Source: Macrostomum lignano (Eukaryota). From it: DNA of 64,000 bases. Within the stretch, counting starts at the first letter, position 1. Every line of letters starts with the position of its first letter. Location: positions 62,001 through 126,000 of the forward strand of contig NIVC01002789.1 in assembly GCA_002269645.1 (NCBI GenBank), read 5' to 3'. Below, in pieces: positions 17,040-44,639 of this stretch. The notes under the pieces were generated by a model, which was not told the origin of the DNA, searched no databases, and saw only the letters and a list, made by a program, of their open reading frames with translations. The position numbers and the translations under genes were made by a program.

Positions 17040-20000
17040 ATGCTGCCTCTCCTGCTAGCAATGCTCATCCTGGGCCCCCCGGCCTCCGCCCAGGTGAGCA
17101 TCAGCGGCCAGTTCGACCCTGCCGGGGCCAAGCAGGCAGCCGGCCGCAGCGTCTCCTTCACCTGCCAGGTGACCAACAAGCAGCCGCTGCTGTCCGTCCG
17201 CCTGACCTGCCCACTGGCCAAGGTCGGCACCATCTGCTTCGAGAACTGCAACCGCATCTGCGCCGACCCCAGCCTGTGCGCTGAGGAGCCGCGCCTGCTG
17301 CGGGTCACCTGCTCGAAGAGCAGCGCCGGCAGCGTGCAGACCTTTGCCTACCGGCTCGACATGCTGGACACCGGCTTCTCCGGCGACTGGGGGTGCAAGC
17401 ACGTGACCTACGAGAGCACCCCGAGGAGCCTCACAGTCTACCCCAGCCCCGCCATCGACTCCCTGGACTTCACCGCCGCCACCGTCGTGGAGTCGCAGTC
17501 GACAGCCGCCCTGTGCGTCGCCCAGCCCACTGTGGGCAGCCTGCGGTTCTCCTGGACCCGGCGCGACGGCCTCAGCATCCCGCACTCCAGCTCCGGGCCC
17601 AACGCCACCGCCTCTCGCCTGACCATCGCCAGCGCTCAGCGCACAGACGACGCCGTCTACGTGTGCACCGTCGAGAACGAAGTCGGCGTCAGCGCCAGCC
17701 GGGAGGCCGGCCTCACCGTCAACTATCCGCCAAGCTCCGTGCGCCTGTCTAGCAGCCTGTCGTCGCCGCTGCAGGCCGGCGTCTCCGTGACCTTCGCCTG
17801 CCAGGTGGGCGGCGGCCGGCCGGAGCCGCTGCGCCGGTTCTACCGGGAGCGCCTCGGACAGTCGCGCGAGGAGCTGCCGGCGGCCACCGTCACTCTGGAG
17901 GCGGCCGACAACGCGGCGAAATTCTACTGCAAAGCGGAGAGCGTCGGCATCATCGGCACGGAGGTCTGGAGCTCCCCGATCGCCTTTTCGGTCTCCTTTC
18001 CGCCCAGCGGCCTCGAGCTGCTGCAGCAGCCGCCGGGGCCGGCGACCGATGGCGGGCCGGCCAAGCAGTTCAGCTGCTCGGCCACCTCCAGCAGCAACCC
18101 GCCCAGCTCGGCCGCCTGGTACTCCATCAGCCCGCTGGGCCTGCAGGAGCAAATCTCGGACAGCCGCGTGTCCGTCAGCCAGACAGACGGGCCGAACTCG
18201 GCCAAGCAGCTGCAGAGCCGGCTGGACATCGCCGCCAGCCGCGACCTCAACGGCTTCAAATTCCGCTGCGTCCTGCTGTACAACTCGCGCGAGATCGGCC
18301 GCAAAGACGTCGCCCTGGAGGTGAAATTTTTGCCGAGCAGCTCCGCGCTGACGGCTAGCCCGGCCGACGGGGTGCTGGAGAACACGGCGCTGACCCTGCT
18401 GTGCCGCGCCGGCTCCGCGAACCCGCCAGCCCGGGTGCACTGGTTCCGGCAGTCCCGCGGCGGCGCCAGCTCGGCCGAGAATGTCACCGTGCAGGCGGTG
18501 GCAACGACGGAGCCGGCGGAGAACCTCGGCACTGCAGTCAGCAGCCGCCTGCTCGTCACGCAGACCAGGCGGGCAGACAACGGCACGGTGTACACCTGCA
18601 CCATCGTCTACGACAGCGCCGCAATCGGCGCCCTGTCCAAGTCGACCTCCGTGCTGGTGCTGTACCCGCCATCCGTCAACGTCACAGTGTCGCCCAGCTC
18701 GCCTCGCGAAGGCGACCCGGTGACGCTGAGCTGCCTGACAACCGGCGGGAGTCCCGACGGCAGCGGCGGCGGCTTCACCTTCGTATGGCGACATCGGAAT
18801 GCCAGCGGCGTCTGGGCGACGCTCGCCAGCGCAACGTCCACTTTGAGCATCGCGTCGGCCAGCTCAGGAGACAACGGCGTCTACCAGTGCTCGGTGGGGT
18901 CCCGCGGTGGCTCCGCCACAGCCTCGGCCGCCCTTAACCTGACCTTCGCCCCGGCCGCCTGGCCGGGCACCCAGTTGGCCGTGTCTTCCCCACTCGGACA
19001 GCCGGCCGAGCTGCTCCTGCGGGTGACGGCCAACCCGCCGCCCAGCGGGGCCGTCTGGCAGCGCCTCGGAGCCGATGGCACCAAGCAGGCGCTGAACCCG
19101 CGCCTGTCCACCGTCAGCAGCGCGGTGAACCTCACCTACCGCCTCGTCATCCCGGAGGTGACCTCGGCTGACTACGGCAACTATGTGTGCACCGTGGCCA
19201 ACTCAGTCGGCACTCGCGACTTCACCTTCAGCTTGAACCGGCCGGGGCCGCCCGCCACCCCCAGCGGCCTGCAGGTGCTGAACACCACGGCGGTGTCCGC
19301 CAACCTGCGCTGGCGCAGTGAATTCAACGGCGGCTTCGAGCAGACCTTCACGCTGCAGTGGCGGCCGCTCGGCAGCTCCGTGTGGAGCGTCGCCAACCAG
19401 AAGACCGGCCTGCGGGACCCCGGCTTCGGCCTGCCCGTCACCGAGACCGTCACCGCGCTGGAGTCGCAGGCCACCTACTATGCGCGAGTCCGAGCAGAGA
19501 ACTTCTACGGCGGCGCGATCAACGTCAGCCCCTTCACCGACGAGGTGGCGCTGACCACCCGGAAGCTGCCGCTGATCCCGGACGCATCGGTGGCGGCCCA
19601 GGTGACCTCCGGGCAGCTGGAGATCCAGTTCACAGCGCCGATGTCGCCGCACTACACCGGGGTGTACGTGAAGCTGTGCAGCCCCGGCTGCGTCCTGCGA
19701 CAGCTGCTGGAGTCGGAGGTCCGCTCAGGCCGCGCCAGCATCCTGCTGCCCGACCCGCAGGCGGCCTACAGCTTCTCCCTGCTGGTGCTGGACGGCCCGG
19801 TCACCGTCTACGAGACCCGCAGCTTCGACGCCCGGCTGAATGCCGCCGCGTCGACCACTCAGGCGAGCACCGCCAGCGCCGGCCTGTCCTTCGAGATCGT
19901 GCTGGGCATCTCCATCGGCAGCGCCGTGGTGGTGGCCATCCTGCTGGCCGCGGTCATCGTCACCGCCATCCTGCAGTGCCGTCGCGGCGGCGGCGACGGA

Positions 20001-20346
20001 GGCGGCGGCCCGGGCGTCGGCAAGTCGATGCGGTCGACCAACTCCAGCGACGTCACCAACGGGTCGGGCGGTTCGCCGGCGGCCATCGCTGCGGGCCACC
20101 CGGTGTGCGGCCAGGCGGTGCAGCTGGGCTACCGCGCCAGCCTGTCCAGCGGGATGGCACCGCAGGACGGCTACTACTGCCCGCCGCCCCCGGCCCTGGG
20201 CTCCGACTGCGGCTGCGGCAACGGCGGCGTCTGCGGCGGCTACGGCTATGGTGGCGGCGGCGGCGGCGGAGGCTTCTCGCCGGGCTCCCGGATGTCGGCT
20301 CAGGAGGCGCCGCTGCACCCGTCGTACTACTCATATCACCTGGCCG

Positions 20347-20392
<46 letters not shown>

Positions 20393-20885
20393 CCACATGT
20401 TGATGATGGCAGCTGCCGCCGCCGCCTCCCGCCAGCGACTCAACGGCACTAGCAACGGCTCCCTGAACAGCCAGCAGCCGCAGCAGCAGCACGGCAGGAT
20501 GCTGACGCCCGACCTGGTCCAGTCGGAGACTCCGGCGGGCGCAACGGAGCTGATCAGGTACAGCAGCCGCATCTCCTTGGCGAGCAGCCGCAGCGGCTTC
20601 AGCGTCATCCCGGCGACCTCCAGTGCGGCTGCGACGTCAACGCCAGCAGCAACTGGCGCTTCTTCGGCGCCGCCGGTCACTAGCGCCACCGCTGAGACGG
20701 CCTTCGCGTTCCCCAGCGGCGGCGGAGGTGGCGGCGGCGGCGGATTTCGCATCGTTGCCGGCAACGGCGGCCTGTCGGACATCGGCGCCGCTCTGCACAG
20801 CCTGCAGCAGCAGCCGACCTTCGTGGCGTCGCCGCTGACGCCGCACCTCGAGTCCAACATGGAGGCCATTGAGAACTACGTGTGA
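17040..20885 (+). CDS. Single-exon type I membrane Ig-superfamily adhesion protein, echinoid/nephrin-like (signal peptide, 7 Ig, 1 clear plus 1 degenerate FN3, TM, ~300-aa low-complexity tail), 1281 aa
   Basis: Uninterrupted ORF with strong GC3 bias. Signal peptide MLPLLLAMLILGPPASA. Ig F-strand motifs such as DDAVYVC, DNAAKFYC, DLNGFKFRC, DNGTVYTC, DNGVYQC and DYGNYVC. FN3 segment LRWRSEFNGGFEQTFTLQW resembles nephrin/echinoid/sidestep FN3. TM IVLGISIGSAVVVAILLAAVIVTAIL (~19896-19973). Tail has poly-Q (14) and poly-G and ends ENYV. Orthology not resolved. Confidence 0.9.
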
Positions 20886-22050: not shown

Positions 22051-22687
22051 GACGAGAAGCCGGAGGCAGACGTTCGGAGATCTCTGAGCTCCGGTGGATC
22101 CGCAGCAGACAGCCACGGCAGCGGCAGGGCGCCAGCACACAGTCAGGAATGCATCAGGAAGTCCCTCGTGCCCGGGCCTCTCAGACAGCTGCATGGAGGG
22201 TTATAAAAGCTGTGGGTGCGCGGCTGAAGAGGGTGCCGATAGATCACAGCTGAGGAATGCGCTCCGACCGGGGGATCGGGGCCTCAAGAAAAAAGTCTGG
22301 CTCTGATTCGGGCAGCGCAGCAAAGCGGAGCCGACTTGCATGTTCATTGTGAAAGTCGCACTTCCGCAAAATACAAGCGGGCAGTGGCTGCACCCGGTCG
22401 GCTGTGACTAATCACTGGCAGACTCGGGCCTGACCTTCGTGTCCTGAAGCCGCTGGTGGGCGTTTCAGCGCTGGCCGTGATGCTGTTTTGCTCCACTTAG
22501 CTGCAAGACTGCTTTTACAAGCCACTCTGAAGGGCAATCAGAATTGGAATGCGCTGAAAAATAAAAAATGAACAACAAAAACTTGTTGGCTAACTTTTTG
22601 TGTGCATCGCTTGCATCGGCTGTACAGCGTCGTCCTGAGTTCGATTTTAGCTTGACTGTTTAAAGTTTGAGTAGTTCAGCTAAAAAG

Positions 22688-25600
22688 GACCCACAGAACT
22701 TCTTGACCCACTGAACTCCTTGACCCACTGAACTCCTTGACCCACTGAACTCCTTGAACCAAAGAACTCCTTGACCCACTGAACTCCTTGACCCACTGAA
22801 CTCCTTGATCCAAAGAACTGCTTGACCCACTGAACTCCTTGAAACACTGAACTTCTTGACCCAAAGAACTCCTTGACCCACTGAACTCCTTGACCCACTG
22901 AACTCCTTGACCCACTGAACTCCTTGACCCATTGAACTCCTTGACCCACTGAACTCCTTGACCAATGGAACTGCTTGACCAAAAGAACTCCTTGACCCAC
23001 TGAACTCCTTGACCCATTGAACTCCTTGACCCACTGAACTCCTTAAAACACTGAACTGCTTGACCCACTGAACTTCTTGACCCAAAGAACTCCTTGACCC
23101 ACTGAACTCCTTGACACACTGAACTTCTTGACCCAAAGAACTCCTTGACCCACTGAACTCCTTGACCCACTGAACTCCTTGACCCACTGAACTCCTTGAC
23201 CCACTGAACTCCTTGACCCATTGAACTCCTTGACCCACTGAACTCCTTGACCCACTAAACTCCTTGACCCATTGAACTCCTTGACCCACTGAACTCCTTG
23301 ACCCACGGAACTGCTCGACCCACTGAACTCCTTGACCCACGGAACTCCTTGAACCAAAGAACTCCTTGACCCACGGAACTCCTTGACCCACTGAACTCCT
23401 TGATCCAAAGAACTGCTTGACCCACTGAACTCCTTGACCAATGGAACTGCTTGACCCACTGAACTCCTTGACCAATGGAACTGCTTGACCCACTGAACTC
23501 CTTGACCCACTGAACTCCTTGACCCACTGAACTCCTTGACCCACTAAACTCCTTGACCCACTGAACTCCTTGAAACACTGAACTCCTTGACCCACTGAAC
23601 TCCTTGAAACACTGAACTGCTTGACCCACTGAACTTCTTGACCCAAAGAACTCCTTGACCCACTGAACTCCTTGAAACACTGAACTCCTTGACCCACTGA
23701 ACTCCTTGAAACACTGAACTGCTTGACCCACTGAACTTCTTGACCCAAAGAACTCCTTGACCCACTGAACTCCTTGACCCACTGAACTGCTTGACCCACG
23801 GAACTCCTTGACCCACTGAACTCCTTGAAACACTGAACTGCTTGACCCACGGAACTCCTTGACCCACTGAACTCCTTGACCAATGGAACTGCTTGACCCA
23901 CTGAACTCCTTGACCAATGGAACTGCTTGACCCACTGAACTCCTTGACCCACTGAACTCCTTGACCCACTGAACTCCTTGACCCACGGAACTCCTTGACC
24001 CACGGAACTCCTTGACCCACTGAACTCCTTGACCCACTAAACTCCTTGACCCACTGAACTCCTTGACCCACTGAACTCCTTGACCCACGGAACTCCTTGA
24101 CCCACTGAACTCCTTGACCCACGGAACTGCTCGACCCACTGAACTCCTTGACCCACGGAACTCCTTGACCCACTGAACTCCTTGAAACACTGAACTGCTT
24201 GACCCACTGAACTTCTTGACCCAAAGAACTCCTTGACCCACTGAACTCCTTGACCCACTGAACTCCTTGACCCACTGAACTCCTTGACCCACGGAACTCC
24301 TTGACCCAAAGAACTCCTTGACCCACTGAACTCCTTAAAACACTGAACTGCTTGACCCACAGAACTGCTTGACCCACGGAACTCCTTGACCCACTGAACT
24401 CCTTGACCCACTGAACTCCTTGACCCACTGAACTCCTTGACCCACTGAACTCCTTGAAACACTGAACTGCTTGACCCACTGAACTTCTTGACCCAAAGAA
24501 CTCCTTGACCCACGGAACTCCTTGACCCACTGAACTCCTTGACCCACTGAACTCCTTGACCCACGGAACTCCTTGAACCAAAGAACTCCTTGACCCACGG
24601 AACTCCTTGACCCACGGAACTGCTCGACCCACTGAACTCCTTGAAACACTGAACTGCTTGACCCACTGAACTTCTTGACCCAAAGAACTCCTTGACCCAC
24701 GGAACTCCTTGACCCACTGAGCTCCTTGACCCACGGAACTGCTCGACCCACTGAACTCCTTGACCCACGGAACTCCTTGAACCAAAGAACTCCTTGACCC
24801 ACGGAACTCCTTGACCCACTGAACTCCTTGACCCACGGAACTGCTCGACCCACTGAACTCCTTGAAACACTGAACTGCTTGACCCACTGAACTTCTTGAC
24901 CCAAAGAACTCCTTGACCCACTGAACTCCTTGACCCACTGAACTCCTTGACCCACTGAACTCCTTGACCCACGGAACTCCTTGACCCAAAGAACTCCTTG
25001 ACCCACTGAACTCCTTGAAACACTGAACTGCTTGACCCACAGAACTGCTTGACCCACGGAACTCCTTGACCCACTGAACTCCTTGACCCACTGAACTCCT
25101 TGACCCACTGAACTCCTTGACCCACTGAACTCCTTGAAACACTGAACTGCTTGACCCACTGAACTTCTTGACCCAAAGAACTCCTTGACCCACGGAACTC
25201 CTTGACCCACTGAACTCCTTGACCCACTGAACTCCTTGACCCACGGAACTCCTTGAACCAAAGAACTCCTTGACCCACGGAACTCCTTGACCCACGGAAC
25301 TGCTCGACCCACTGAACTCCTTGAAACACTGAACTGCTTGACCCACTGAACTTCTTGACCCAAAGAACTCCTTGACCCACGGAACTCCTTGACCCACTGA
25401 GCTCCTTGACCCACGGAACTGCTCGACCCACTGAACTCCTTGACCCACGGAACTCCTTGAACCAAAGAACTCCTTGACCCACGGAACTCCTTGACCCACT
25501 GAACTCCTTGACCCACGGAACTGCTCGACCCACTGAACTCCTTGAAACACTGAACTGCTTGACCCACTGAACTTCTTGACCCAAAGAACTCCTTGACCCA

Positions 25601-28365
25601 CTGAACTCCTTGAAACACTGAACTGCTTGATCCACTGAACTTCTTGACCCAAAGAACTCCTTGACCCACTGAACTCCTTGACCCACTGAACTCCTTGACC
25701 CACTGAACTCCTTGACCCACTGAACTCCTTGACCCACTGAACTCCTTGAAACACTGAACTCCTTGACCCACGGAACTGCTCGACCCACTGAACTCCTTGA
25801 AACACTGAACTGCTTGACCCACTGAACTTCTTGACCCAAAGAACTCCTTGACCCACTGAACTCCTTGAAACACTGAACTCCTTGACCCACTGAACTCCTT
25901 GAAACACTGAACTGCTTGACCCACTGAACTTCTTGACCCAAAGAACTCCTTGACCCACTGAACTCCTTGACCCACTGAACTGCTTGACCCACGGAACTCC
26001 TTGACCCACTGAACTCCTTGAAACACTGAACTGCTTGACCCACGGAACTCCTTGACCCACTGAACTCCTTGACCAATGGAACTGCTTGACCCACTGAACT
26101 CCTTGACCAATGGAACTGCTTGACCCACTGAACTCCTTGACCCACTGAACTCCTTGACCCACTGAACTCCTTGACCCACGGAACTCCTTGACCCACGGAA
26201 CTCCTTGACCCACAGAACTGCTTGACCCACGGAACTCCTTGACCCACTGAACTCCTTGACCCACTGAACTCCTTGACCCACGGAACTCCTTGACCCACTG
26301 AACTCCTTGACCCACGGAACTCCTTGACCCACTGAACTTCTTGACCCAAAGAACTCCTTGACCCACGGAACTCCTTGACCCACTGAACTCCTTGACCCAC
26401 TGAACTCCTTGACCCACGGAACTCCTTGAACCAAAGAACTCCTTGACCCACGGAACTCCTTGACCCACGGAACTGCTCGACCCACTGAACTCCTTGAAAC
26501 ACTGAACTGCTTGACCCACTGAACTTCTTGACCCAAAGAACTCCTTGACCCACGGAACTCCTTGACCCACTGAGCTCCTTGACCCACGGAACTGCTCGAC
26601 CCACTGAACTCCTTGACCCACGGAACTCCTTGAACCAAAGAACTCCTTGACCCACGGAACTCCTTGACCCACTGAACTCCTTGACCCACGGAACTGCTCG
26701 ACCCACTGAACTCCTTGAAACACTGAACTGCTTGACCCACTGAACTTCTTGACCCAAAGAACTCCTTGACCCACTGAACTCCTTGAAACACTGAACTCCT
26801 TGACCCACTGAACTCCTTGAAACACTGAACTGCTTGACCCACTGAACTTCTTGACCCAAAGAACTCCTTGACCCACTGAACTCCTTGACCCACTGAACTG
26901 CTTGACCCACGGAACTCCTTGACCCACTGAACTCCTTGAAACACTGAACTGCTTGACCCACGGAACTCCTTGACCCACTGAACTCCTTGACCAATGGAAC
27001 TGCTTGACCCACTGAACTCCTTGACCAATGGAACTGCTTGACCCACTGAACTCCTTGACCCACTGAACTCCTTGACCCACTGAACTCCTTGACCCACGGA
27101 ACTCCTTGACCCACGGAACTCCTTGACCCACTGAACTCCTTGACCCACTAAACTCCTTGACCCACTGAACTCCTTGACCCACTGAACTCCTTGACCCACG
27201 GAACTCCTTGACCCACTGAACTCCTTGACCCACGGAACTGCTCGACCCACTGAACTCCTTGACCCACGGAACTGCTCGACCCACTGAACTCCTTGACCCA
27301 CGGAACTCCTTGACCCACTGAACTCCTTGAAACACTGAACTGCTTGACCCACTGAACTTCTTGACCCAAAGAACTCCTTGACCCACTGAACTCCTTGACC
27401 CACTGAACTCCTTGACCCACTGAACTCCTTGACCCACGGAACTCCTTGACCCAAAGAACTCCTTGACCCACTGAACTCCTTGAAACACTGAACTGCTTGA
27501 CCCACAGAACTGCTTGACCCACGGAACTCCTTGACCCACTGAACTCCTTGACCCACTGAACTCCTTGACCCACTGAACTCCTTGACCCACTGAACTCCTT
27601 GAAACACTGAACTGCTTGACCCACTGAACTTCTTGACCCAAAGAACTCCTTGACCCACGGAACTCCTTGACCCACTGAACTCCTTGACCCACTGAACTCC
27701 TTGACCCACGGAACTCCTTGAACCAAAGAACTCCTTGACCCACGGAACTCCTTGACCCACGGAACTGCTCGACCCACTGAACTCCTTGAAACACTGAACT
27801 GCTTGACCCACTGAACTTCTTGACCCAAAGAACTCCTTGACCCACGGAACTCCTTGACCCACTGAGCTCCTTGACCCACGGAACTGCTCGACCCACTGAA
27901 CTCCTTGACCCACGGAACTCCTTGAACCAAAGAACTCCTTGACCCACGGAACTCCTTGACCCACTGAACTCCTTGACCCACGGAACTGCTCGACCCACTG
28001 AACTCCTTGAAACACTGAACTGCTTGACCCACTGAACTTCTTGACCCAAAGAACTCCTTGACCCACTGAACTCCTTGAAACACTGAACTGCTTGATCCAC
28101 TGAACTTCTTGACCCAAAGAACTCCTTGACCCACTGAACTCCTTGAAACACTGAACTCCTTGACCCACTGAACTCCTTGACCCACTGAACTCCTTGACCC
28201 ACTGAACTCCTTGACCCACTGAACTCCTTGAAACACTGAACTGCTTGACCCACTGAACTCCTTGACCCACTGAACTCCTTGACACACTGAACTCCTTGAC
28301 CCACTGAACTCCTTGACCCACGGAACTCCTTGACCCACGGAACTGCTCGACCCACTGAACTCCTT
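22688..28365. repeat. 17-bp satellite, ~5.7 kb (~330 monomers) with block duplications
   Basis: Consensus gaactccttgacccact with recurring variants (...cacg, ...aaacact, gaactgctt..., gaacttcttgacccaaa, ...ccaatg). Confidence 0.99.
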
Positions 28366-35834: not shown

Positions 35835-36555
35835 TAAATAATGACCTTGACCCACTTGCGATCAGCTGTACTCACTAATTGTAGCCTTGACCAAGTAAGA
35901 TCTTGACCTAATTCTGACCGTGACCTACTAGTTCTGACCTTGACCTTACTTTGACCTTTACCTTCTAATTATGACCTTGACGTACAAATTATGACCTTGA
36001 CCTACTAATTATGACCTTGACCTACAAATTATGACCTTGACCTACAAATTATGACCTTGACGCACTAGTTATGACCTTGACCTACTTACTATGACCTTTA
36101 CCTACTAATTATGACCTTGACGTACAAATTATGACCTTGACGTACAAATTATGACCTTGACGCACTAGTTATGACCTTGACCTACTTACTATGACCCTGA
36201 TTTAGTTATAATGACCTTGACCTACTAATAATGACTTTGACCTACTAATTTAGAATTTGACCTACTAATTATGACCTTGATCTAATTTTTATGACTTTGA
36301 GTTACTAATTTCGACTCTGATCTACTTATTGTGACCTCGGCTCACTTGAAACAAACAATACCTAATTAACCATGTTCATGGAAAAAATTACTACAAATTT
36401 GACCCACTAGTTATGACCCTGACCCATTAACACAGTAATAATGTGACCCCACTGAAAATGACCTTGACCCACTAGTTAGGACCCTGACCCATTAACACAG
36501 TAATAATGCGACCCCACTGAAAATGACCTTGACCCACTAGTTAGGACCCTGACCA
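35835..36555. repeat. TGACC-rich repeats 3' of CCHCR1: 20-bp unit atgaccttgacctacaaatt (~35930-36330) and a ~65-bp duplication (~36400-36555)
   Basis: Direct read. Confidence 0.88.
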
Positions 36556-36573
36556 GCTTGCGCCAGCGCAGGC

Positions 36574-39500
36574 TCAGCCGGAGTTGGCCAGCATTTGTCT
36601 CAAGTCGCGAACAGCGGCATGCAGTCGCGGGTCCTCGGACTCCTCGATGGCGGACCCGCCGACGGGCATCGCCGAGTGCGGGCGCGCTGCCCGCTGCTGC
36701 TGCTTCTCTGAGGCGGCCGCCGCCGCCGCGGCCTGCAGGAGGTTCCGCTCGCCCTCCACCAGGCGCAGCCGATCCCGCAGTCGCTCCGTGGCCAGCTGAA
36801 AGTCTTCAACAGCCTGACGGCCTTGAGCCTCGGCGGCCTCGCGTTCCCGCTGCAGCCGGCGCTCCGACTGGGCCAGCGCGGCCGCCAGCTTCGCCTGCTC
36901 GCGCGCCGACGCGTCCAGCGCGTCCGCGTGGCGCCCGGCTTCGAGGCGGCGCGCCTGGCGCTCCGAGTCCAGCGCTGATCGAGTTTCGGACAGGGCGGCG
37001 CGAAGCTCGGACACCGAGGAGAGTTCGGACAGCTGCGAGCGGGTGAGATTGATGGACTGGGGTGAGATTGGTGGACTGGGGTGAAATTGACGATCTGGGG
37101 TGAGATTGATGGACTGGGGTGAGATTGGTGGACTGGGGTGAAATTGACGATCTGGGGTGAGATTGATGGACTGGGGGAGATCGATGGACTTGGGTGAGAT
37201 GGATGGACTGGGGTGAGATTAATGGAGTGGGGGAAATTGATGAAGTGGGATGAGATTGATGGACTGGGATGAGATTGATGGAGTGGGATGAGATTGATGG
37301 AGTGGGGGTGAGATCGATGGACTGGGGGAGATTGATGGACTGGAGTGAGATTGATAAACTAGGGTGAGATTGATGGACTGGGATGAGATTGATGGACTGG
37401 GATGAGATTGATGGAGTGGGATGAGATTGATGGACTGGGATGAGATTGAAAGAGTGGGATGAGATTGATGGACTGGGATGAGATTGATGGAGTGGGATGA
37501 GATTGATGGAGTGGGGGTGAGATCGATGGACTGGAGTGAGATTGATGGACTGGAGTGAGATTGATAAACTAGGGTGAGATTGATGGACTGGGATGAGATT
37601 GATGGACTGGGATGAGATTGATGGAGTGGGATGAGATTGATGGACTGGGATGAGATTGAAAGAGTGGGATGAGATTGATGGAGTGGGGTGAGATTGACAA
37701 TTCAGGAGTGAGATTAACCAAGTGGGTAAGATTGAGACTATTAAATCAGACAGTAAAACATGCCGCCTCTGCACCTTCTCGGACGCAGCCAGCTGGTCGG
37801 TGGTGTCGGCCAGGCGGCCGAGGCGCCCCTCCATGTCGGTCAGGCGCTCCATCCACAGCCCGGCCGCAGATTCGAAGGCTGCCCTGGCCGATTCAACAGC
37901 CTCGGCCGCTTCGCTCGCCTCTCGCGCCCGACGCTCTGCCAGACGCCGGGCGTCCGACTGAAGCCGCTCCGCCAGCCGGTCCGCAGCGGCCAGCTTGCGC
38001 TCGGCGGCCGCAGCGCGCGCCTCCGCCTCGTCTAGGCGGCGGCGAAGATCGGAAACTGCGGCCTCGGCTTCGGCCTCCTACAGGGGTGGGGATTGGGACT
38101 CTCAGTGACCTTTGAGTGTGCCTGAGTGTCCATGTCTGCCTGCCTGTCTGTCTGCCTGTCTACCCCACCTACCGTCTGTTTCAGCTGCCTGTCTGCCCCA
38201 CCTAACATCTGTCTCAGCTGCCTGTCTGCCCCACCTACCATCTGTCTCAGCTGCCTGTCTGCCCCACCTACCATCTGTCTCAGCTGTCTGTCTGCCCCAC
38301 CTACCGTCTGTCTCAGCTGCCTGTCTGCTCCACCTACCGTCTGTCTCAGCTGCCTGTCTGCCCCACCTACCGTCTGTCTCAGCTGTCTGTTTGCCCTACC
38401 TACCGTCTGTCTCAGCTGCCTGTCTGCTCCACCTACCGTCTGTCTGCTCCACCTAACGTCTGTCTCAGCTGTTTGTCTGCCCACCTACCATCTGTCTCAG
38501 CTGCCTGTCTGCTCCACCTACCGTCTGTCTCAGCTGTCTGTCTGCCCTACCTACCGTCTGTCTCAGCTGCCTGTCTGCCCTACCTACCGTCTGTCTAAGC
38601 TGCCTGTCTGCCCCACTTACCATCTGTCTCAGCTGTCTGTCTGCTCCACCTACCGTCTGTCTCAGCTGTTTGTCTGCCCACCTACCATCTGTCTCAGCTG
38701 CCTGTCTGCTCCTCCTACCGTCTGTCTCAGCTGTCTGTCTGCTCCACCTACCGTCTGTCTCAGCTGTCTGTCTGCCCTACCTACCGTCTGTCTCAGCTGC
38801 CTGTCTGCCCTACCTACCGTCTGTCTCAGCTGCCTGTCTGCCCTACCTACCGTCTGTCTAAGCTGCCTGTCTGCCCCACTTACCGTCTGTCTCAGCTGTC
38901 TGTCGTGCGCCCAGCGCTCAGCCTCGGCCTGCACCAGCGCCTTGTACAGCCGGGGCCTCCAGGCCGCAGCCTCGCCGCCAGCGCTGGGCTCGGCAAGCAG
39001 CTCGGACTGCAGGGCCAGCCGGCGTTCCCGAAGCTCAGCGTCGGCTCGAAGGCGTTCGTTTTCAGCCTCAAGCTGGGCGGCTCTGGTGGCCAGGGCGTCG
39101 CGACTGTCATCCCAGTCCTGCATTGTAAAGCAGTCTAGGTTGTGAGAAACAACTCGAGAATCGAATAGATCTACATGTGTCTATAGATGCCTGTCATTGA
39201 TCTACATCTCTGTGTCTGTAGATGCCTGTCATTGATCTACATCTCTGTGTCTGTAGATATACATGTGTCTATAGATGCCTGTCATTGATCTACATCTCTG
39301 TGTCTGTAGATATACATGTGTCTATAGATGCCTGTCATTGATCTACATCTCTGTGTCTGTAGATGCCTGTCATTGATCTACATCTCTGTGTCTGTAGATA
39401 TACATGTGTCTATAGATGCCTGTCATTGATCTACATCTCTGTGTCTGTAGATATACATGTGTCTATAGATGCCTGTCATTGATCTACATCTCTGTGTCTG

Positions 39501-40800
39501 TAGATGCCTGTCATTGATCTACATCTCTGTGTCTGTAGATATACATGTGTCTATAGATGCCTGTCATTGATCTACATCTCTGTGTCTGTAGATATACATG
39601 TGTCTATAGATGCCTGTCATTGATCTACATCTCTGTGTCTGTAGATATACATGTGTCTATAGATGCCTGTCATTGATCTACATCTCTGTGTCTGTAGATA
39701 TACATGTGTCTATAGATGCCTGTCATTGATCTACATCTCTGTGTCTGTAGATATACATGTGTCTATAGATGCCTGTCATTGATATACATCTCTGTGTCTG
39801 TAGATATACATGTGTCTATAGATGCCTGTCATTGATATACATCTCTGTGTCTGTAGATCTACATGTGTCTATAGATGCCTGTCATAGATCTACATCTGTG
39901 TCTGTAGATGTACATGTATCTATAGATACCTGTAATTGATCTACAAGCGTCAATAAAGACGTGGTATAGATCTACATGTGTCCATAGATGCCTGCTGTAC
40001 ATCCACATGTGTCTATAGATTCCTACTGTAGATCAAAATCTGTCTCTGTAGACGTCGGCTATAGACGTACAAGTGTTCATAAATGCTTGCCATTGATCTA
40101 CAAGCGTCTATAGAAAAGTGTTATAGATCTCTACAAGTGTCTATAGATGCCTGCTGTAGATCTACACGTGTCTATAGATACCTAGAGATATCTGGAGATC
40201 CACGAGTCTATAGAGACCTGTGTAACCACGATGCCCTATAGATTTAAGCTTCTGTTTACACATGTCTATAGAAAAACCCGCTGCAGATCTACAGGCGCCT
40301 ATAGATTCCTGATTTTCTACCGCTCAAAACATGTGCCTACAGATGTCTGCTCAATATCTACAGACACTAATACTCAAAAGATTTGTCTGTACAGCAACAG
40401 GCGCTCGGCTCACCCGCGGCGTTGGCTCAGCCAGCTCCATCCGCTGCTGCCTCTCCTGATCCAGCAGGCTCTGCGTCTCCAGCTGCTGCCGCCGCAGCCG
40501 CTCCAACTCTCGACGCTGCCGGGCGAGGTCGCGCTCCAGCTGCCGGCAGGAGCGGCACGGAGCCGCCGCAGGAGGGGCGTCGGCAGGGACAAACCGAACC
40601 GAGTGCGGCGCCGCAGCGGCAGCCGACGGCAGGAAGGCATCCGGAGGCAGCAGGAGGCTGTCATCCAGCGAGGAGGCAACATCGGTGGTGGCAAAGCTGG
40701 TTGCCATGGGCAACTGCGGTGCGGACTGAGACTCGGGATCGCAATAGTAGTAATTATTATTATTTTGGTTAGTTCGCTGTCTGTCTAAGAAAGCGGCCAT
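36574..40800 (-). CDS. CCHCR1: CCHCR1-like coiled-coil alpha-helical rod protein; exons 40800-~40390 (donor uncertain), 39117-38884, 38077-37775, 37032-36574
   Basis: Exons 2-4 join in phase 0 through GT-AG introns. Recognised from memory as similar to CCHCR1: LALQSELL..WRPRLYKALVQAEAE (cf. LALQEEEL..WREKVFALMVQLKAQ) and AREQAKLAAALAQSERRLQRERE..RLRDRLRLVEGERNLL (cf. RREHAKAVVSLRQIQRRAAQEKE..RLARRLQELERDKNLM). No search was run. Confidence 0.68.
37040..37700. repeat. 17-18-bp minisatellite, CCHCR1 intron 3
   Basis: Unit gggtgagattgatggact and variants; abuts the 3' splice site. Confidence 0.92.
38130..38900. repeat. 33-bp minisatellite (~23 copies), CCHCR1 intron 2; the unit contains the exon end and the 5' splice site
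   Basis: Minus-strand unit gcagacaggcagctgagacagacg|gtaggtggg. Confidence 0.93.
39160..40300. repeat. 53/35-bp minisatellite, degenerating toward 40300, CCHCR1 intron 1
   Basis: Unit tagatgcctgtcattgatctacatctctgtgtctgtagatatacatgtgtcta. Confidence 0.92.
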
Positions 40801-40821
40801 TGTGGGGATGCTCTGGTCTCT

Positions 40822-40915
40822 CTGAAAGCGAGTTCAATATTTCATCTATTAATTCTTAAAACGAAAAAAATCGGTACAAATGAAAAAATGTAAAAAAAAG
40901 AGTATAACAATGAAA
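40822..40915 (-). promoter_or_regulatory. Candidate 3' splice / trans-splice acceptor with a long U-rich tract, 21 nt before the CCHCR1 ATG
   Basis: Minus strand reads tcttttttttacattttttcatttgtaccgatttttttcgtttt...ctcgctttcag|agagaccagagcatccccacaATG. No upstream donor identified. Confidence 0.55.
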
Positions 40916-41164
40916 ACTATCCTGGCGCAAAAATCGACTTTCATATGATTATTCCTTCGTTATTAATTACATTTTAAAACGCTTGGATTGGAAAAATGCA
41001 TCATTATAGATCTAGTATAAAACCAGGAAGATACCGTAGAAGTGAGAGGGGAGGCTTCAATAGAAGAGAGGGCAGGGAGTGAAGTATAGAGCAGAGGTGA
41101 GAAAGCCCAGTCAGAATTTAGACAGGTTAAAAACCACAAGTCCTCAGACAGGACACAGTCAGAC

Positions 41165-41185
41165 GACAGACAAAGACAGACAGAC

Positions 41186-41224
<39 letters not shown>

Positions 41225-41255
41225 TATAGATGGACAGACAAACAGACAGACAAGC

Positions 41256-41296
<41 letters not shown>

Positions 41297-41327
41297 TATA
41301 GATGGACAGACAAACAGACAGACAAGC

Positions 41328-41367
<40 letters not shown>

Positions 41368-41495
41368 GACAGGCAGACAGACAGACAGACAGGCAGACAG
41401 ACAGACAGACAGACAGACAGACAGGCAGGCAGACAGACAGACATACAGACAGGCAGGCAGGCAGGCAGACAGGCAGACAGGCAGACAGACAGGCA
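41165..41495. repeat. (GACA)n microsatellite between MRM1 and CCHCR1
   Basis: Direct read. Confidence 0.95.
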
Positions 41496-41523: not shown

Positions 41524-43343
41524 TCAGGCCGCAGCAGACCGCAGCCAGCCCGAGACGCAGTGCAGCAGGATGCCGGCCGCCACTCCCACATTTAGATGCG
41601 GCATGGCGCAGGCGGCGCCAGCTTGTGGAATTCGCAGCACCAGGTTGCAGAGGCTCAGAAGCTCAGCTGACAGGCCGGAGCCCTCGCTGCCAAGCAGCAG
41701 AAGCACCGGACCGCTGGGCGGATGCGGCAGCAGCTCCGACAGCCGATCGACGCCGGCGCAAGGCACTCCAGGGGCGCCGTCATCGCCTCCCGAGCTGCCT
41801 AGCGCCAGCCAGCCAGCCTGGCGCCATTGGCGCACAAACTCAGCGCTGCTGGTGGGCAGGGCGCGCAAGTCCGTGGCCTCCAGAGCGCCGCAGCTCACCT
41901 TGGAGACCACTGGCAGAGGGGGGCAGCTGTGGGTGCCCGGTATGAGCACCGGGCTGATACCGTAGAACAGGCAGGTGCGGAGCAGACTGCCGAAGTTAAG
42001 GATGTCCACCACCTGCGGGTGCGTGCTGATTCATGTGATCTTGCCCATTCTTCAATGCATCTCTTGCCGATTCTCTCCTATGCATCTCTTGCCGATTCTC
42101 TCCAATGCATCTCTTGCCCATTCTCTCCAATGCATCTCTTGCCGATTCTCTCCAATGCATCTCTTGCCCATTCTCTCCAATGCATCTCTTGCCGATTCTC
42201 TCCAATGCATCTCTTGCCGATTCTCTCCAATGCATCTCTTGCCGATTCTCTCCAATGCATCTCTTGCCGATTCTCTCCAATGCATCTCTTGCCGATTCTC
42301 TCCAATGCATCTCTTGCCGATTCTCTCCAATGCATCTCTTGCCCATTCTCTCCAATGCATCTCTTGCCGATTCTCTCCAATGCATCTCTTGCCGATTCTC
42401 TCCAATGCATCTCTTGCCGATTCTCTCCAATGCATCTCTTGCCGATTCTCTCCAATGCATCTCTTGCCGATTCTCTCCAATGCATCTCTTGCCGATTCTC
42501 TCCAATGCATCTCTTGCCGATTCTCTCCAATGCATCTCTTGCCGATTCTCTCCAATGCATCTCTTGCCGATTCTCTCCAATGCATCTCTTGCCGATTCTC
42601 TCCAATGCATCTCTTGCCGATTCTCCCCTGCATCTCTTGCCGATTCTCTCCAATGCATCTCTTGCCGATTCTCCCCTGCATCTCTCACCCATTATACCCT
42701 GCATCTCTCACCCATTATACCCTGCATCTCTTGCCCATTCTACCCTGCATCTCTTCCCCATTATACCCTGCATCTCTCCCCCATTATACCCTGCATCTCT
42801 TCCCCATTCTCCCCTTCATCTCTTCCCCATTCTCCCCTTCATCTCTTCCCCATTCTCCCCTGCATCTCTTCCCCATTCTCCCCTGCATCTCTCCCCCACC
42901 TGGTCCAGCAGCACACACAGCCGACTCGCCGCCAGCTCAGAGCGGCAGTCGGAGGCACAGCCGGGCAGCACAGGCACAGGGAAGTGTCCGCACCGCAGCG
43001 CGAATCCCTGATGCGCCCGACCCCGGCACAGAGCGGCCAGTTCGCGCCTGTCAGCGTACCTGACCAGGTGAGCATAGCTGGCAGCGATGAGCTGGCGCAG
43101 CTCGGCCGAGCTGGAGCTGTCGCAGCCGAAGTCTTCAATGACGTCGCTTTGCCCTTGGTGCCGAATGTCAACGTAGATTTCGTCAATTCGACGACGGCGA
43201 GACAACAGCGCCTGCCAGACCGGGTGAATGCCGTACACCAGCTCGGAGCCGCCGCCGCCGCTGTTGCTGAACAACCTGTGGCACAGCAGCAGCGACAGTC
43301 GGGCAGCTGACGGTCGCAGTAGGAGCTGGAGAAAAAGGGCTGT
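41524..43343 (-). CDS. MRM1: Mitochondrial rRNA 2'-O-methyltransferase 1 (SpoU/TrmH SPOUT family); exons 43343 (or 43325)-42900 and 42012-41524; start codon unresolved
   Basis: Substrate-binding segment ELVYGIHPVWQALLSRRRRIDEIYV and LAALCRGRAHQG. SPOUT motifs LDQ|VVDILNFGSLLRT, SCPPLPVVSKVSCGALE, LLLLGSEGSGLS and LNVGVAAGILLH. Phase-0 intron 42899-42013 (cag|gtg...cag|gtg). N-terminal LLLRPSAARLSLLLCHRLFS resembles a mitochondrial presequence. Confidence 0.87.
42045..42895. repeat. 25-bp minisatellite, MRM1 intron
   Basis: Unit ttgccgattctctccaatgcatctc; begins directly at the 5' splice site. Confidence 0.95.
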
Positions 43344-43394
43344 CTGAAGAAGCCGGTCGGTGAAATATTGGAGATTCGAAAGTTGGAATGTGAC

Positions 43395-43870
43395 GGTGGC
43401 CCAGCAACTGGGGATCTGAGAGGCTGGCATAGCAACTGGGGATCTGGGAGACTGGCCCAGCAACTGAGGATCTGGGATGCTGGCCTAGCAACTGGGGATC
43501 TGGAAGGCTGGCCTAGCAACTGGGGATCTGGGAGACTGGCCCAGCAACTGGGGATCTGGAAGGCTGGCCCAGCAACTGGGGATCTGGAAGGCTGGCCCAG
43601 CAATTGGGGATCTGGAAGGCTGGCCCAGCCAGCAACTGGGGATCTGGAAGGCTGGCCCAGCCAGCAACTGGGGATCTGGAAGGCTGGCCCAGCAACTGGG
43701 GATCTGGAAGGCTGGCCCAGCAACTGGGGATCTGGAAGGCTGGCCCAGCAACTGGGGATCTGGAAGGCTGGCCCAGCAACTGACGGTCTGGGAGGGCGAT
43801 GGCCCAGCAACTGAGGATTTGGGAGGCTGGTGGCCCAGCAACTGAGGATCTGGGAGGCTGGCACAGCAAC
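43395..43870. repeat. 28-bp minisatellite between RPL31 and MRM1
   Basis: Unit ggctggcccagcaactggggatctggaa, the reverse complement of the 10444-12177 family. Confidence 0.93.
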
Positions 43871-44075
43871 TACCTTTCTAGAACTAATCACAAGCCACAA
43901 GCACAGGTAGAGATGCTCTCTAAATAATATGAAAGTAAAGAACAAGCGCAGAGACAGTGCAATCCAGCTAAGAACACGCTCAACAGCGTCAGCCCCTGTA
44001 TTTCATGCTCAATCAAGAACCTGCCCTCGCAATCTATCAGCAAGTCAGTCCCATCTAGTCAAGTTTAACCTCGCA

Positions 44076-44438
44076 CTACTCGGCCTCAACATTGATGGTC
44101 TGCTTGCCCTTGAACTCGGCGCAGGGCACGTAGGAGACCAGGGTGTACAGCTTGTGCGCGCTGTCCTCGTCCTCGTTGCGCTTCCTGGCCAAGCGGACGC
44201 GGACGCGGAACGGCACATTGCGGACGCCTTGGCTCCACACGAACTTGTTCAGCCGGGTGTCCAGCCGCACGTCCGGGGTGCCCATCATTCTCTCCGCGAA
44301 TTTGCGAATCTCCGTCATTGCACGCGGTGCCCGGCGCTTGAAACCGATGCCGTGAATGCGCTTGTGCAGGTTGATGGTGTACTCCCGGGTCACCACGTCT
44401 TTTAGGGCGCTCTTTTTCTTCTCACGTCGGGGAGCCAT
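44076..44438 (-). CDS. RPL31: 60S ribosomal protein L31 (eL31), 120 aa, intronless CDS
   Basis: [93 protein letters not shown] is an unmistakable eL31. The upstream extension in the ORF track comes from a 30-bp tandem duplication. Confidence 0.98.
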
Positions 44439-44639
44439 GGACTGGCGGGCATGCAATTGGGGGATTTTTGTTCTGTAGACTTGACAATAAATAATTTTTG
44501 TTTTGTAGACTTGACAATAAATAATTTTTGTCTGTTTCACATTGCTGCCACTTCAGTTAGGATCTCTAGGCTGAATTCAGACCTTGCAGGATTCAAATTA
44601 TAATTTTCCAAGTGTTACTGTTAGTAGAATATATATGAC

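What the first reader, a model, noticed from the sequence alone, without database searches (positions are those of the whole stretch)
43260..43430. MRM1 may have no start codon of its own and take its Met from the spliced leader
Seen: between the 28-bp array and the conserved ELVYGIHPV there is no ATG, but two pyrimidine-rich acceptors (cttcttcag|aca at 43343, tttttctccag|ctc at 43325) are both in phase 0. Adding AUG gives MTALFLQLLLRPSAARLSLLLCHRLFS or MLLLRPSAARLSLLLCHRLFS: Leu/Arg/Ser-rich, acid-free, with an RLF-S type cleavage site as expected for a mitochondrial presequence. Alternatives seen: an in-frame ATG inside a variant repeat unit (43430), which would add ~30 residues unlike a presequence, and an ATG-less 46-nt possible exon at 43920-43875. 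Inference: mitochondrial targeting would depend on trans-splicing.
Basis: partly seen in the sequence, partly recalled or inferred. Interest (0 to 1): 0.7.

Follow-up and report, generated by a model that had tools for sequence, protein, structure and literature searches.

The report
Flatworm MRM1 start codon from spliced leader
In the flatworm Macrostomum lignano, the gene for a mitochondrial rRNA methyltransferase (MRM1) most likely has no dependable start codon of its own and borrows the AUG that ends the trans-spliced leader, a mechanism already known in flatworms, so this is a well-supported but not surprising case.

Summary
The sequence observation is correct. The window is Macrostomum lignano (RPL31 98-99% identical; locus equals NIVC01002789.1). 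The species' 35-nt spliced leader ends in ATG.

MRM1 lies on the minus strand as two exons, 43343/43325-42900 and 42012-41524. It has one in-frame genomic ATG upstream of its conserved domain (43430, inside a variant 28-bp repeat unit). The next Met codon is near the C-terminus. Two YTNCAG acceptors put exon starts at 43343 and 43325, both in phase 0.

Two other M. lignano copies of the locus gave the main new evidence:
- L004 has AGG in place of that ATG and an in-frame TAG made from the first acceptor (cttctTTAG|ACA). It has no usable genomic ATG, yet its 310-codon ORF is intact and shows 5 synonymous to 1 non-synonymous change.
- L003 has TGG at that codon and a different, derived ATG at the start of the array.

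By parsimony the ancestral gene had no genomic ATG. Both flanking genes are annotated with 5' ends at AG acceptors, so the three genes look like an operon.

No transcript data could be reached, so trans-splicing at MRM1 is inferred, not shown. The mechanism is known (Cheng et al. 2006). I class this as a new member of a known kind, of modest interest.

The parts
44076..44438 (-). RPL31 (eL31) CDS, single exon. It is the upstream gene of the probable operon.
   Evidence: 98-99% identical to M. lignano PAA69486/PAA89187. Identical to P0202 on NIVC01002789.1 apart from P0202's one extra N-terminal residue.
44442..44443 (-). AG of the RPL31 trans-splice acceptor (cgccag|TCC ATG). The SL AUG would be in frame, one codon upstream.
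   Evidence: The annotated 5'-partial CDS of the identical locus L005 starts at TCC, directly after this AG.
43397..43871 (-). 28-bp minisatellite (16.5 units) in the RPL31-MRM1 intergenic region, the probable outron. Its length is polymorphic: about 2.5 units in L003, and similar in length to the window's in L004.
   Evidence: TRF; sequences of L003 and L004.
43428..43430 (-). The only in-frame genomic ATG upstream of the MRM1 domain. It lies in a variant repeat unit and is a derived variant private to this haplotype.
   Evidence: The same codon is AGG in L004 and TGG in L003, and GGG in the canonical unit.
43485..43487 (-). In-frame TAG that closes the reading frame upstream of ATG43430.
43344..43345 (-). 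AG of candidate trans-splice acceptor 1 (cttcttcag|ACA, phase 0, matches YTNCAG). In L004 it reads tttag, which makes an in-frame TAG.
43326..43327 (-). AG of candidate trans-splice acceptor 2 (ccctttttctccag|CTC, phase 0, matches YTNCAG, 12-nt pyrimidine run). It is invariant in all four sequences and is probably the main site.
43245..43343 (-). Codons of the putative mitochondrial presequence, (M)TALFLQLLLRPSAARLSLLLCHRLFSNSGGGGS. It has no acidic residue and carries an RLF|S pattern.
   Evidence: GC rises from 0.46 just upstream to 0.65 from here on.
42900..43244 (-). Remainder of MRM1 exon 1. Homology to RlmB/MRM1 begins at ELVYGIHPV (SpoU_sub_bind domain).
   Evidence: Pfam PF08032; alignment A2; donor CAG|gtgggg.
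42013..42899 (-). MRM1 intron, almost entirely a 25-bp tandem array (42039-42892).
   Evidence: The intron is 339 nt in L003 and 2512 nt in L004.
41524..42012 (-). MRM1 exon 2 (SpoU_methylase domain), ending at the stop codon 41526-41524.
   Evidence: Pfam PF00588, E = 4.5e-20.
40798..40823 (-). 5' end of the next gene on the same strand: acceptor gctttcag| (AG at 40823-40822), 21 nt, then ATG at 40800.
   Evidence: The annotated 5'-partial CDS in L004 starts exactly after this AG; window sequence.

Best explanation
MRM1 of Macrostomum lignano is the middle gene of a same-strand cluster: RPL31, then MRM1, then a gene of about 466 aa. The cluster is probably transcribed as one pre-mRNA.

Proposed mechanism:
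- The MRM1 mRNA is made by trans-splicing the 35-nt spliced leader (...TTATTGCATG) to an acceptor just upstream of the coding region. The most likely site is ccctttttctccag|CTC (first exon base 43325). The other candidate is cttcttcag|ACA (43343).
- Both acceptors are in phase 0, so the terminal AUG of the leader becomes the initiator codon. The product starts MLLLRPSAARLSLLLCHRLFS... or MTALFLQLLLRPSAARLSLLLCHRLFS....
- This N-terminus is basic, Leu/Ser-rich and free of acidic residues. It would serve as the mitochondrial presequence of an RlmB-type 2'-O-methyltransferase.
- The 28-bp minisatellite, and the ATG inside it at 43430, lie in the outron and are discarded.

Shown here: the anatomy, the reading phases, the lack of a conserved genomic ATG, the stop codon at the acceptor in one intact copy, and the identity of the organism and its SL.

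Inferred: that this mRNA is actually trans-spliced at these sites, that the SL AUG is the codon used, and that the N-terminus targets mitochondria.
For: 1. Organism and SL. RPL31 is 98-99% identical to M. lignano proteins, and the locus is the same as NIVC01002789.1. The M. lignano SL is CGGTCTCTTACTGCGAAGACTCAATTTATTGCATG, 30% of its genes are trans-spliced, and the acceptor motif is [T/C]TNCAG (PMC8629364). PMC10468722 notes that the Macrostomum SL likely contains the final ATG, which it labels a translation start codon.

2. Known mechanism. The flatworm SL 3'-terminal AUG serves as initiator, and more than 40 S. mansoni cDNAs need it (Cheng 2006, as reported in PMC9851317, and PMC12582326).

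3. Comparison of three haplotypes or homeologues.
- The codon at 43430 is ATG in the window and L005, AGG in L004 and TGG in L003.
- L003 instead has a derived ATG at the start of the array (gtagATG, where the others have gtagTTG).
- L004 has no in-frame ATG and an in-frame TAG formed by the first acceptor.
- Between the RPL31 stop and the acceptor, L004 has only two ATGs. Each opens a 5-codon ORF with no in-phase GT donor.
- By parsimony the ancestor had no genomic start codon.

4. All copies keep an intact 310-codon ORF from acceptor 1. Across the tree there are 9 synonymous and 8 non-synonymous changes (P = 0.022). The L004 branch has 5 synonymous and 1 non-synonymous (P = 0.007).

5. Acceptor 2 and its 12-nt pyrimidine tract are invariant. 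Both YTNCAG sites are in phase 0.

6. No other Met codon occurs for about 283 codons.

7. Operon context. The annotated 5'-partial CDSs of RPL31 and of the downstream gene begin at AG acceptors. From the RPL31 stop to acceptor 1 is about 735 nt, or about 260 nt once the array is subtracted, and only about 335 nt in L003. All are under the 1-kb repeat-adjusted operon threshold of PMC8629364.

8. Composition. GC is 0.46 in the unique 54 nt upstream of acceptor 1 and 0.65 downstream of it.
Against: - No RNA evidence could be reached. No M. lignano transcript or SL-read data are held in the searchable collections.
- No MRM1 protein is annotated on any of the three Mlig_3_7 contigs. An SL-read peak there would normally have produced a 5'-partial gene model, as it did for the neighbours.
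- Two of the three haplotypes do carry an in-frame genomic ATG with an open frame down to the domain. A genomic start cannot be excluded for those copies.
- The copies differ by only about 1.2% in the CDS, so the selection tests rest on 6-17 substitutions.
- The GC3 contrast is not significant (P = 0.086).
- The YTNCAG motif is common.
- The array itself offers further AG acceptors.
- The presequence call is pattern-based only. The first 10 residues of the longer form (TALFLQLLL) are quite hydrophobic.
Confidence: 0.72

Rival explanations
1. Genomic start. In this haplotype, translation starts at ATG43430 inside the minisatellite (and at the array-start ATG in L003). The mRNA would be either not trans-spliced or trans-spliced further upstream. 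The protein would carry a 62-residue N-terminal extension. L004 would then be a null allele.
For: - The ATG is in frame, the frame is open to the domain, and it has a purine (G) at -3.
- Two of the three haplotypes have some in-frame ATG.
- N-terminal extensions of MRM1 homologues are long and variable, 92-167 residues. Length alone therefore does not argue against this start.
Against: - The two ATGs are at non-homologous positions. Each is a single-base derived variant, and neither is shared.
- Of the three derived ATGs in the outron, two are in frame and one is not. That is what chance gives (P about 0.26, my calculation).
- L004 lacks any ATG and has a stop, yet shows 5 synonymous to 1 non-synonymous change.
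- The added 29 residues have no basic residue until position 26 and include an Asp.
- The array length is not a multiple of 3 and varies between copies.
- Any SL added upstream would place its own AUG first.
Confidence: 0.12
2. Decaying or unexpressed gene. The locus has lost its start codon and makes no protein.
For: - No MRM1 protein is annotated on the three contigs, and no close relative appears in the 5.8-billion-protein search.
- One copy has a stop codon at the 5' boundary.
Against: - Three copies keep an intact 310-codon, two-exon ORF with conserved splice sites. Meanwhile the flanking arrays and the intron vary by kilobases.
- Synonymous changes are in excess.
- The SpoU residues invariant across the aligned MRM1/RlmB homologues are kept. 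Both Pfam domains score above their gathering thresholds.
- No other MRM1 from this species turned up in the search.
Confidence: 0.07
3. Non-AUG initiation. Translation would begin at a near-cognate codon, for example the in-frame CTG at 43319-43317 or the TTG/CTG codons upstream, without using the SL AUG.
For: In-frame CTG and TTG codons are plentiful in the Leu-rich 5' region. Non-canonical starts are discussed for trans-spliced mRNAs in PMC9851317.
Against: - It is unnecessary if the SL supplies an in-frame AUG a few codons upstream.
- Near-cognate starts are generally weak (general knowledge).
- It does not explain why both consensus acceptors are in phase 0.
Confidence: 0.05
4. Upstream cis-spliced exon. 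An exon between RPL31 and the array, or beyond RPL31, would supply the ATG and be spliced to 43343 or 43325.
For: A 46-nt segment with an acceptor and a donor exists at 43919-43874. Both acceptors could also serve in cis.
Against: - I enumerated every ATG between the RPL31 stop and the acceptor in four sequences. In the window, L004 and L005 the two upstream ATGs (excluding ATG43430) open 5-codon ORFs with no in-phase GT donor.
- The 46-nt segment has no ATG, and SL-ATG read into it stops after 12 codons.
- An exon beyond RPL31 would require RPL31 to sit inside an MRM1 intron.
Confidence: 0.03

Closest known systems
[quoted passage not shown] I did not read the paper itself; I cite it through PMC9851317 and PMC12582326.
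   Same: The SL ends in AUG. The acceptor is in frame with an ORF that has no genomic AUG of its own. The leader supplies Met1.
   Different: This is a free-living macrostomid rather than a parasite. Here the case rests on genomic and comparative inference, not on cDNAs or translation assays. The added point is that the N-terminus created appears to be an organelle-targeting presequence.
slORFs: open reading frames created by SL addition (slORFfinder, PMC9851317)
   Same: This is the same concept: an ORF whose start codon lies in the SL.
   Different: slORFfinder calls such ORFs from SL-containing reads and ribosome footprints. Neither was available here.
M. lignano SL trans-splicing and operons (Ustyantsev & Berezikov 2021, PMC8629364; Wudarski 2017, PMC5730564)
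   Same: Same species and SL, the same acceptor motif, a conserved housekeeping gene, and a repeat-inflated intercistronic spacer under 1 kb after repeat adjustment.
   Different: The text passages I retrieved from those papers by term search do not mention genes that depend on the SL ATG. MRM1 is not in the deposited protein annotation.
Alternative trans-splicing that decides mitochondrial versus cytosolic location in Trypanosoma brucei (isoleucyl-tRNA synthetase). Recalled from memory, not checked here.
   Same: The choice of trans-splice site determines whether a mitochondrial presequence is translated.
   Different: In trypanosomes the AUGs are genomic and the SL carries no initiator. Here the AUG itself would come from the SL.
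MRM1 / Pet56 / bacterial RlmB (SpoU-class rRNA Gm 2'-O-methyltransferases)
   Same: SpoU_sub_bind and SpoU_methylase domains are present. Homology starts at the same LVYGIHPV motif at which bacterial RlmB begins. The best named hits are vertebrate 'rRNA methyltransferase 1, mitochondrial'.
   Different: Identity to any database protein is only about 30-34%. The N-terminal extension is very short (28-34 residues) compared with 92-167 in the animal homologues aligned.

Membership tests
SL-AUG-initiated flatworm mRNA (slORF) | The species' spliced leader ends in AUG. | tested here: met
   Organism identified as M. lignano. Published SL is ...TTATTGCATG (PMC8629364; PMC10468722).
SL-AUG-initiated flatworm mRNA (slORF) | An acceptor is in phase with the ORF, with no stop between the junction and the conserved domain. 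| tested here: met
   Exon starts at 43343 and 43325 are both phase 0. The frame is open for 310 or 304 codons in all copies.
SL-AUG-initiated flatworm mRNA (slORF) | No genomic in-frame AUG is available to start the functional protein. | tested here: met
   None lies downstream of the acceptors for about 283 codons. Upstream, none is conserved: L004 has none plus a stop, and the window and L003 have private derived ATGs.
SL-AUG-initiated flatworm mRNA (slORF) | The mRNA is actually trans-spliced at that acceptor (SL-junction reads or cDNA). | not testable with these tools
   No M. lignano RNA data are in the collections. No gene model exists in the deposited annotation.
SL-AUG-initiated flatworm mRNA (slORF) | Translation initiates at the SL AUG. 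| not testable with these tools
   This needs ribosome profiling or a reporter assay.
MRM1/RlmB SpoU-class 2'-O-methyltransferase | SpoU_sub_bind plus SpoU_methylase domains above the curated thresholds. | tested here: met
   PF08032 scores 30.9 bits (cut-off 22.8). PF00588 scores 72.6 bits (cut-off 29.7). E. coli YjfH/RlmB structure 1gz0 matches at E = 3e-12.
MRM1/RlmB SpoU-class 2'-O-methyltransferase | Residues invariant across the aligned MRM1/RlmB homologues are kept (stretches D..N.G...R, GSEGSGL and LNV.VAAGI). | tested here: met
   All 31 invariant columns of alignment A2 are by definition shared by the Macrostomum sequence. They include D152, N155, G157, R161, E259, G260, N290 and A294.
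MRM1/RlmB SpoU-class 2'-O-methyltransferase | Mitochondrial location and methylation of mitochondrial large-subunit rRNA. | not testable with these tools
   Only inferred, from the best named hits being mitochondrial MRM1.
MPP-cleaved mitochondrial presequence | Basic, acid-free, hydroxylated/Leu-rich N-terminus with an R-2/R-3 cleavage pattern. | tested here: met
   The SL-Met forms have 3-4 Arg and no Asp or Glu. RLF|S lies at residues 24-27 or 18-21. This is a pattern check only.
MPP-cleaved mitochondrial presequence | Predicted or shown to import into mitochondria. | not testable with these tools
   No TargetP or MitoFates-type predictor was available. The hydrophobic moment is only moderate (0.42-0.57).
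M. lignano operon (downstream gene) | Adjacent same-strand genes less than 1 kb apart after subtracting repeats, with the downstream gene trans-spliced (criterion of PMC8629364). | tested here: inconclusive
   The distance criterion is met: about 260 nt repeat-adjusted in the window, and about 335 nt raw in L003. The flanking genes' annotated 5' ends fall at AG acceptors. Trans-splicing of MRM1 itself is not shown.

The most novel reading that the evidence does not exclude
The three M. lignano copies of MRM1 may capture start-codon turnover in progress. The ancestral gene would have depended entirely on the spliced-leader AUG. One copy has since sealed that dependence with a stop codon at the acceptor. 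Two others have each gained an in-frame genomic ATG by point mutation inside a minisatellite. If those ATGs are used, on upstream-spliced or unspliced mRNAs, they would give long isoforms whose location might differ.
Probability: 0.12. Interest if true: 0.5.

Novelty: new member of a known kind. Interest (0 to 1): 0.3.

Why it matters
- Annotation. Genes whose initiator Met is supplied by the SL are easy to lose or truncate when pipelines trim the leader. MRM1 is absent from the deposited M. lignano protein set. A conserved mitochondrial ribosome-maturation enzyme may therefore be counted as missing when it is present.
- Biology. If confirmed, import of this enzyme into mitochondria would depend on trans-splicing. 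That adds a function for the conserved flatworm SL AUG beyond operon resolution.
- A natural control. The three-copy comparison includes one copy with a stop at the acceptor. It points to a cheap genomic screen for other SL-AUG-dependent genes: find ORFs open to a phase-0 acceptor with no conserved ATG among the homeologues.

The mechanism itself has been known since 2006, so this is an incremental finding.

Tried and rejected
- Rfam scan of the window found nothing.
- The homologue search for MRM1 found no flatworm or close relative. The best hit was 34% identical (vertebrate MRM1), so no orthologue N-termini from sister species were available.
- An exact look-up of the window's RPL31 found nothing on record. 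The locus was reached instead through near-identical M. lignano RPL31 proteins.
I did not try them by any other route.
- Searches of paper supplements for MRM1, RPL31 or the scaffold names in PMC5816591, PMC5730564 and PMC8629364 found nothing. No paper mentions both Macrostomum and MRM1. Cheng 2006 itself is not held.
- L001 and L002 turned out to be a different RPL31 paralogue, next to RPS21 and without MRM1. I used them only as context.
- Absence of ATG in the 152-nt stretch was rejected as evidence, because P is about 0.23.
- The acceptor motif alone was rejected as evidence, because it is not enriched.
- The length of the N-terminal extension was rejected as a discriminator, because homologues range from 3 to 167 residues.
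- The 46-nt upstream exon was rejected as a source of a start codon. It has no ATG, and SL-ATG meets a stop inside it (read directly from the sequence).
- I ran no further search on looking for a fourth haplotype, because the expected gain was small.
Full report
**What is in the window**

The region lies on the minus strand. An intronless RPL31 gene (44438-44076) is followed by about 200 nt of unique sequence. Then comes a 28-bp minisatellite (43397-43871, 16.5 units) and a 54-nt unique AT-richer stretch.

After that a GC-rich reading frame begins. It runs to a donor at 42900 (CAG|gtgggg). It resumes after an 887-nt intron, made almost wholly of a 25-bp array, at 42012, and ends at the stop codon 41526-41524.

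The product has SpoU_sub_bind and SpoU_methylase domains above Pfam's thresholds. It matches E. coli RlmB/YjfH. Its best named relatives are vertebrate 'rRNA methyltransferase 1, mitochondrial' at about 31-34% identity. Homology starts exactly at ELVYGIHPV, where bacterial RlmB itself begins. Everything upstream of that motif is therefore an N-terminal extension.

**Checking the observation**

- On this strand the only ATG between 43480 and 43200, in any frame, is at 43430. It is in frame, sits in a variant repeat unit, and has an in-frame TAG 19 codons upstream at 43487-43485.
Both are in phase 0. They are the only two of the 12 AGs listed in 43435-43241 that fit the motif [T/C]TNCAG. The second has a 12-nt pyrimidine run.
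It has no ATG, and an SL-ATG read into it stops after 12 codons.
- These features are weak taken alone. A 152-nt stretch with no ATG has P of about 0.23. The acceptor motif is as common as chance predicts.
- The coding region has no further Met codon for about 283 codons. Homologues have 3-7 in the same span. Whatever starts this protein must therefore lie at or above the acceptors.

**Organism and spliced leader**

RPL31 is 98-99% identical to Macrostomum lignano proteins. The contig NIVC01002789.1 of assembly GCA_002269645.1 (locus L005) matches the window across the RPL31-MRM1 interval, including the ATG at 43430 and all the variant sites that differ in L003 and L004.

The M. lignano SL is CGGTCTCTTACTGCGAAGACTCAATTTATTGCATG. 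About 30% of genes receive it, the trans-acceptor motif is [T/C]TNCAG, and about 15% of genes sit in operons. Operon spacers peak near 100 bp once repeats are subtracted (PMC8629364).

All reported flatworm SLs end in AUG, and that AUG can serve as initiator. More than 40 S. mansoni cDNAs need it (Cheng et al. 2006, as cited in PMC9851317, and PMC12582326). PMC10468722 remarks that the Macrostomum SL likely contains the final ATG, which it labels a translation start codon.

**New evidence from three copies of the locus**

M. lignano is a hidden polyploid. Two further contigs carry RPL31-MRM1: L003 (NIVC01001319.1) and L004 (NIVC01000822.1). Their MRM1 coding sequences are each 933 nt from acceptor 1, are intact, and are about 98.8% identical to the window. 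The 5' flank differs in informative ways.

- At the codon that is ATG in the window and L005, L004 has AGG and L003 has TGG. The canonical repeat unit has GGG. The window's ATG is therefore a private derived variant.
- L003 has only about 2.5 repeat units. It has a different in-frame ATG at the very start of the array (gtagATG, where all the others have gtagTTG), immediately after a TAG. It also has a derived out-of-frame ATG 25 nt before acceptor 1.
- L004 has no in-frame ATG at all. Its first acceptor reads cttctTTAG|ACA. The AG is kept, but an in-frame TAG is created exactly at the proposed exon boundary.
- Between the RPL31 stop and that TAG, L004 has only two ATGs. Each opens a 5-codon ORF with no in-phase GT donor. 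No cis-spliced ATG exon is possible in that interval.
- Acceptor 2 and about 25 nt around it are identical in all four sequences.
- By parsimony, the common ancestor of the three copies had no genomic start codon.
- Of the three derived ATGs in the flank, two are in frame and one is not. That is what chance gives (P about 0.26, my calculation).

**Is the ATG-less copy alive?**

Nei-Gojobori counts give 9 synonymous and 8 non-synonymous changes over the three-taxon tree. Under neutrality 27% would be synonymous (P = 0.022). On the L004 branch alone there are 5 synonymous and 1 non-synonymous change (P = 0.007).

The numbers are small. Even so, the ORF, the splice sites and the invariant SpoU residues are intact in all copies, while the neighbouring arrays and the intron vary widely (339, 887 and 2512 nt).

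Base composition agrees. GC is 0.46 in the unique 54 nt before acceptor 1 and 0.65 from the acceptor onward. The GC3 contrast is 0.56 against 0.76, with P = 0.086.

**Context**

The deposited annotation gives 5'-partial CDSs that begin at AG acceptors:

| Gene and locus | Sequence at the annotated 5' end |
|---|---|
| RPL31, L003 and L004 | ttcccag\|CC CGC CAG TCC ATG |
| RPL31, L005 (same as the window) | cgccag\|TCC ATG |
| Gene downstream of MRM1, L004 | gctttcag\|AGAGAC..ATG |
| RPS21, paralogous locus L001 | cctttgcag\|CCG... |

MRM1 therefore sits between two genes whose annotated 5' ends fall at AG acceptors, all on one strand. From the RPL31 stop to acceptor 1 is about 735 nt in the window, of which 475 nt is the array. 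The same distance is about 335 nt in L003. This fits the published operon criterion, and a downstream operon gene needs trans-splicing to gain a cap.

**Best explanation and its limits**

The SL is most likely spliced at 43325, or at 43343. Its AUG then starts MLLLRPSAARLSLLLCHRLFS... or MTALFLQLLLRPSAARLSLLLCHRLFS.... These N-termini have 3-4 Arg, no acidic residue and an RLF|S pattern, which is consistent with a mitochondrial presequence.

The longer form from ATG43430 would add 29 residues. These have no basic residue until position 26 and include an Asp.

I put this explanation at about 0.72. What is missing is direct RNA evidence:
- No M. lignano reads or transcripts were reachable.
- No paper or supplement held mentions the gene.
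- No MRM1 model exists in the deposited annotation, although the pipeline did produce 5'-partial models for the neighbours. This is a mild point against, or a sign of low expression or multi-mapping among near-identical copies.

The rivals, in order of confidence, are:
- a genomic start at ATG43430 in this haplotype (0.12);
- a silent or decaying gene (0.07);
- near-cognate initiation (0.05);
- an upstream cis-spliced exon (0.03).

**Comparison with what is known, and novelty**

This works like the SL-AUG-initiated mRNAs of Schistosoma (Cheng 2006) and the 'slORFs' of PMC9851317. The structural membership criteria are met: the SL ends in AUG, the acceptor is in phase, and no genomic AUG is conserved. 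The two functional criteria, junction reads and initiation at the SL AUG, could not be tested.

The idea that trans-splicing decides mitochondrial targeting has a precedent in trypanosomes (from memory, not checked). There, however, the AUGs are genomic.

I class this as a new member of a known kind. The most novel reading still open is that the three copies show start-codon turnover between the SL and the genome (probability about 0.12).

Interest is 0.3. The finding is useful for annotation, since a conserved gene is missing from the protein set. It is also a tidy natural experiment, but it would not surprise a flatworm RNA biologist.

Noticed in passing
window 44441-44460 (minus strand); L003 and L004 about 9980-10010: The RPL31 trans-splice acceptor differs between haplotypes. 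L003 and L004 have ttcccag|CCCGCCAGTCC ATG, where the SL AUG is out of frame. In the window and L005 that site reads ttgcatg, so the AG is lost, and it matches the SL 3' end ATTGCATG at 8 of 8 bases. The annotated 5' end moves to cgccag|TCC ATG, which puts the SL AUG in frame and would give MSMAPRR.
   Followed up: partly
window 40798-40823 (minus strand); L004 about 15235: The gene downstream of MRM1 (about 466 aa, no Pfam hit) is annotated as starting exactly at gctttcag|AGAGAC. That is 21 nt before its own ATG (40800). The SL AUG would be in frame, 7 codons upstream of the genomic ATG.
   Followed up: partly
L001 11623 and L002 11626: At the paralogous RPL31 locus, the RPS21 CDS is annotated as 5'-partial and starts exactly at cctttgcag|CCG. 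The SL AUG would be in frame, 10 codons upstream of the genomic ATG. In L002, at its annotated start, the frame differs over the first 20 or so codons (AIVQAAHSNNGALIYPTQMRRDPAHHR...), which suggests an indel or a mis-set codon start.
   Followed up: no
window 10445-12178 (plus strand): A second, larger array of the same 28-bp minisatellite lies here (62 copies, 96% matches), in the opposite orientation to the one upstream of MRM1. The repeat is therefore a dispersed family. It is open in all three frames on its CCAG-rich strand.
   Followed up: partly
window 42013-42899; L003 11150-11488; L004 11573-14084: The single MRM1 intron is essentially one 25-bp tandem array. Its length is 887, 339 and 2512 nt in the three copies, while the splice sites stay fixed.
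   Followed up: partly
window 1213-1635 (plus strand) and 17040-20885 (plus strand): There is a nuclear-receptor zinc-finger DNA-binding domain exon ([27 protein letters not shown]...). There is also a 1281-codon uninterrupted ORF that looks like an Ig/FN3-type transmembrane protein with poly-Q and poly-G tails. I did not examine either.
   Followed up: no
window 22660-28355 (minus strand), 1535-2938, 36000-39945, 41155-41492: A very large share of the window is tandem arrays (periods of 4, 19, 20, 25, 28, 33 and 53 nt, among others). Many create long spurious ORFs. This fits the repeat-rich M. lignano genome and is a hazard for ORF-based annotation.
   Followed up: no
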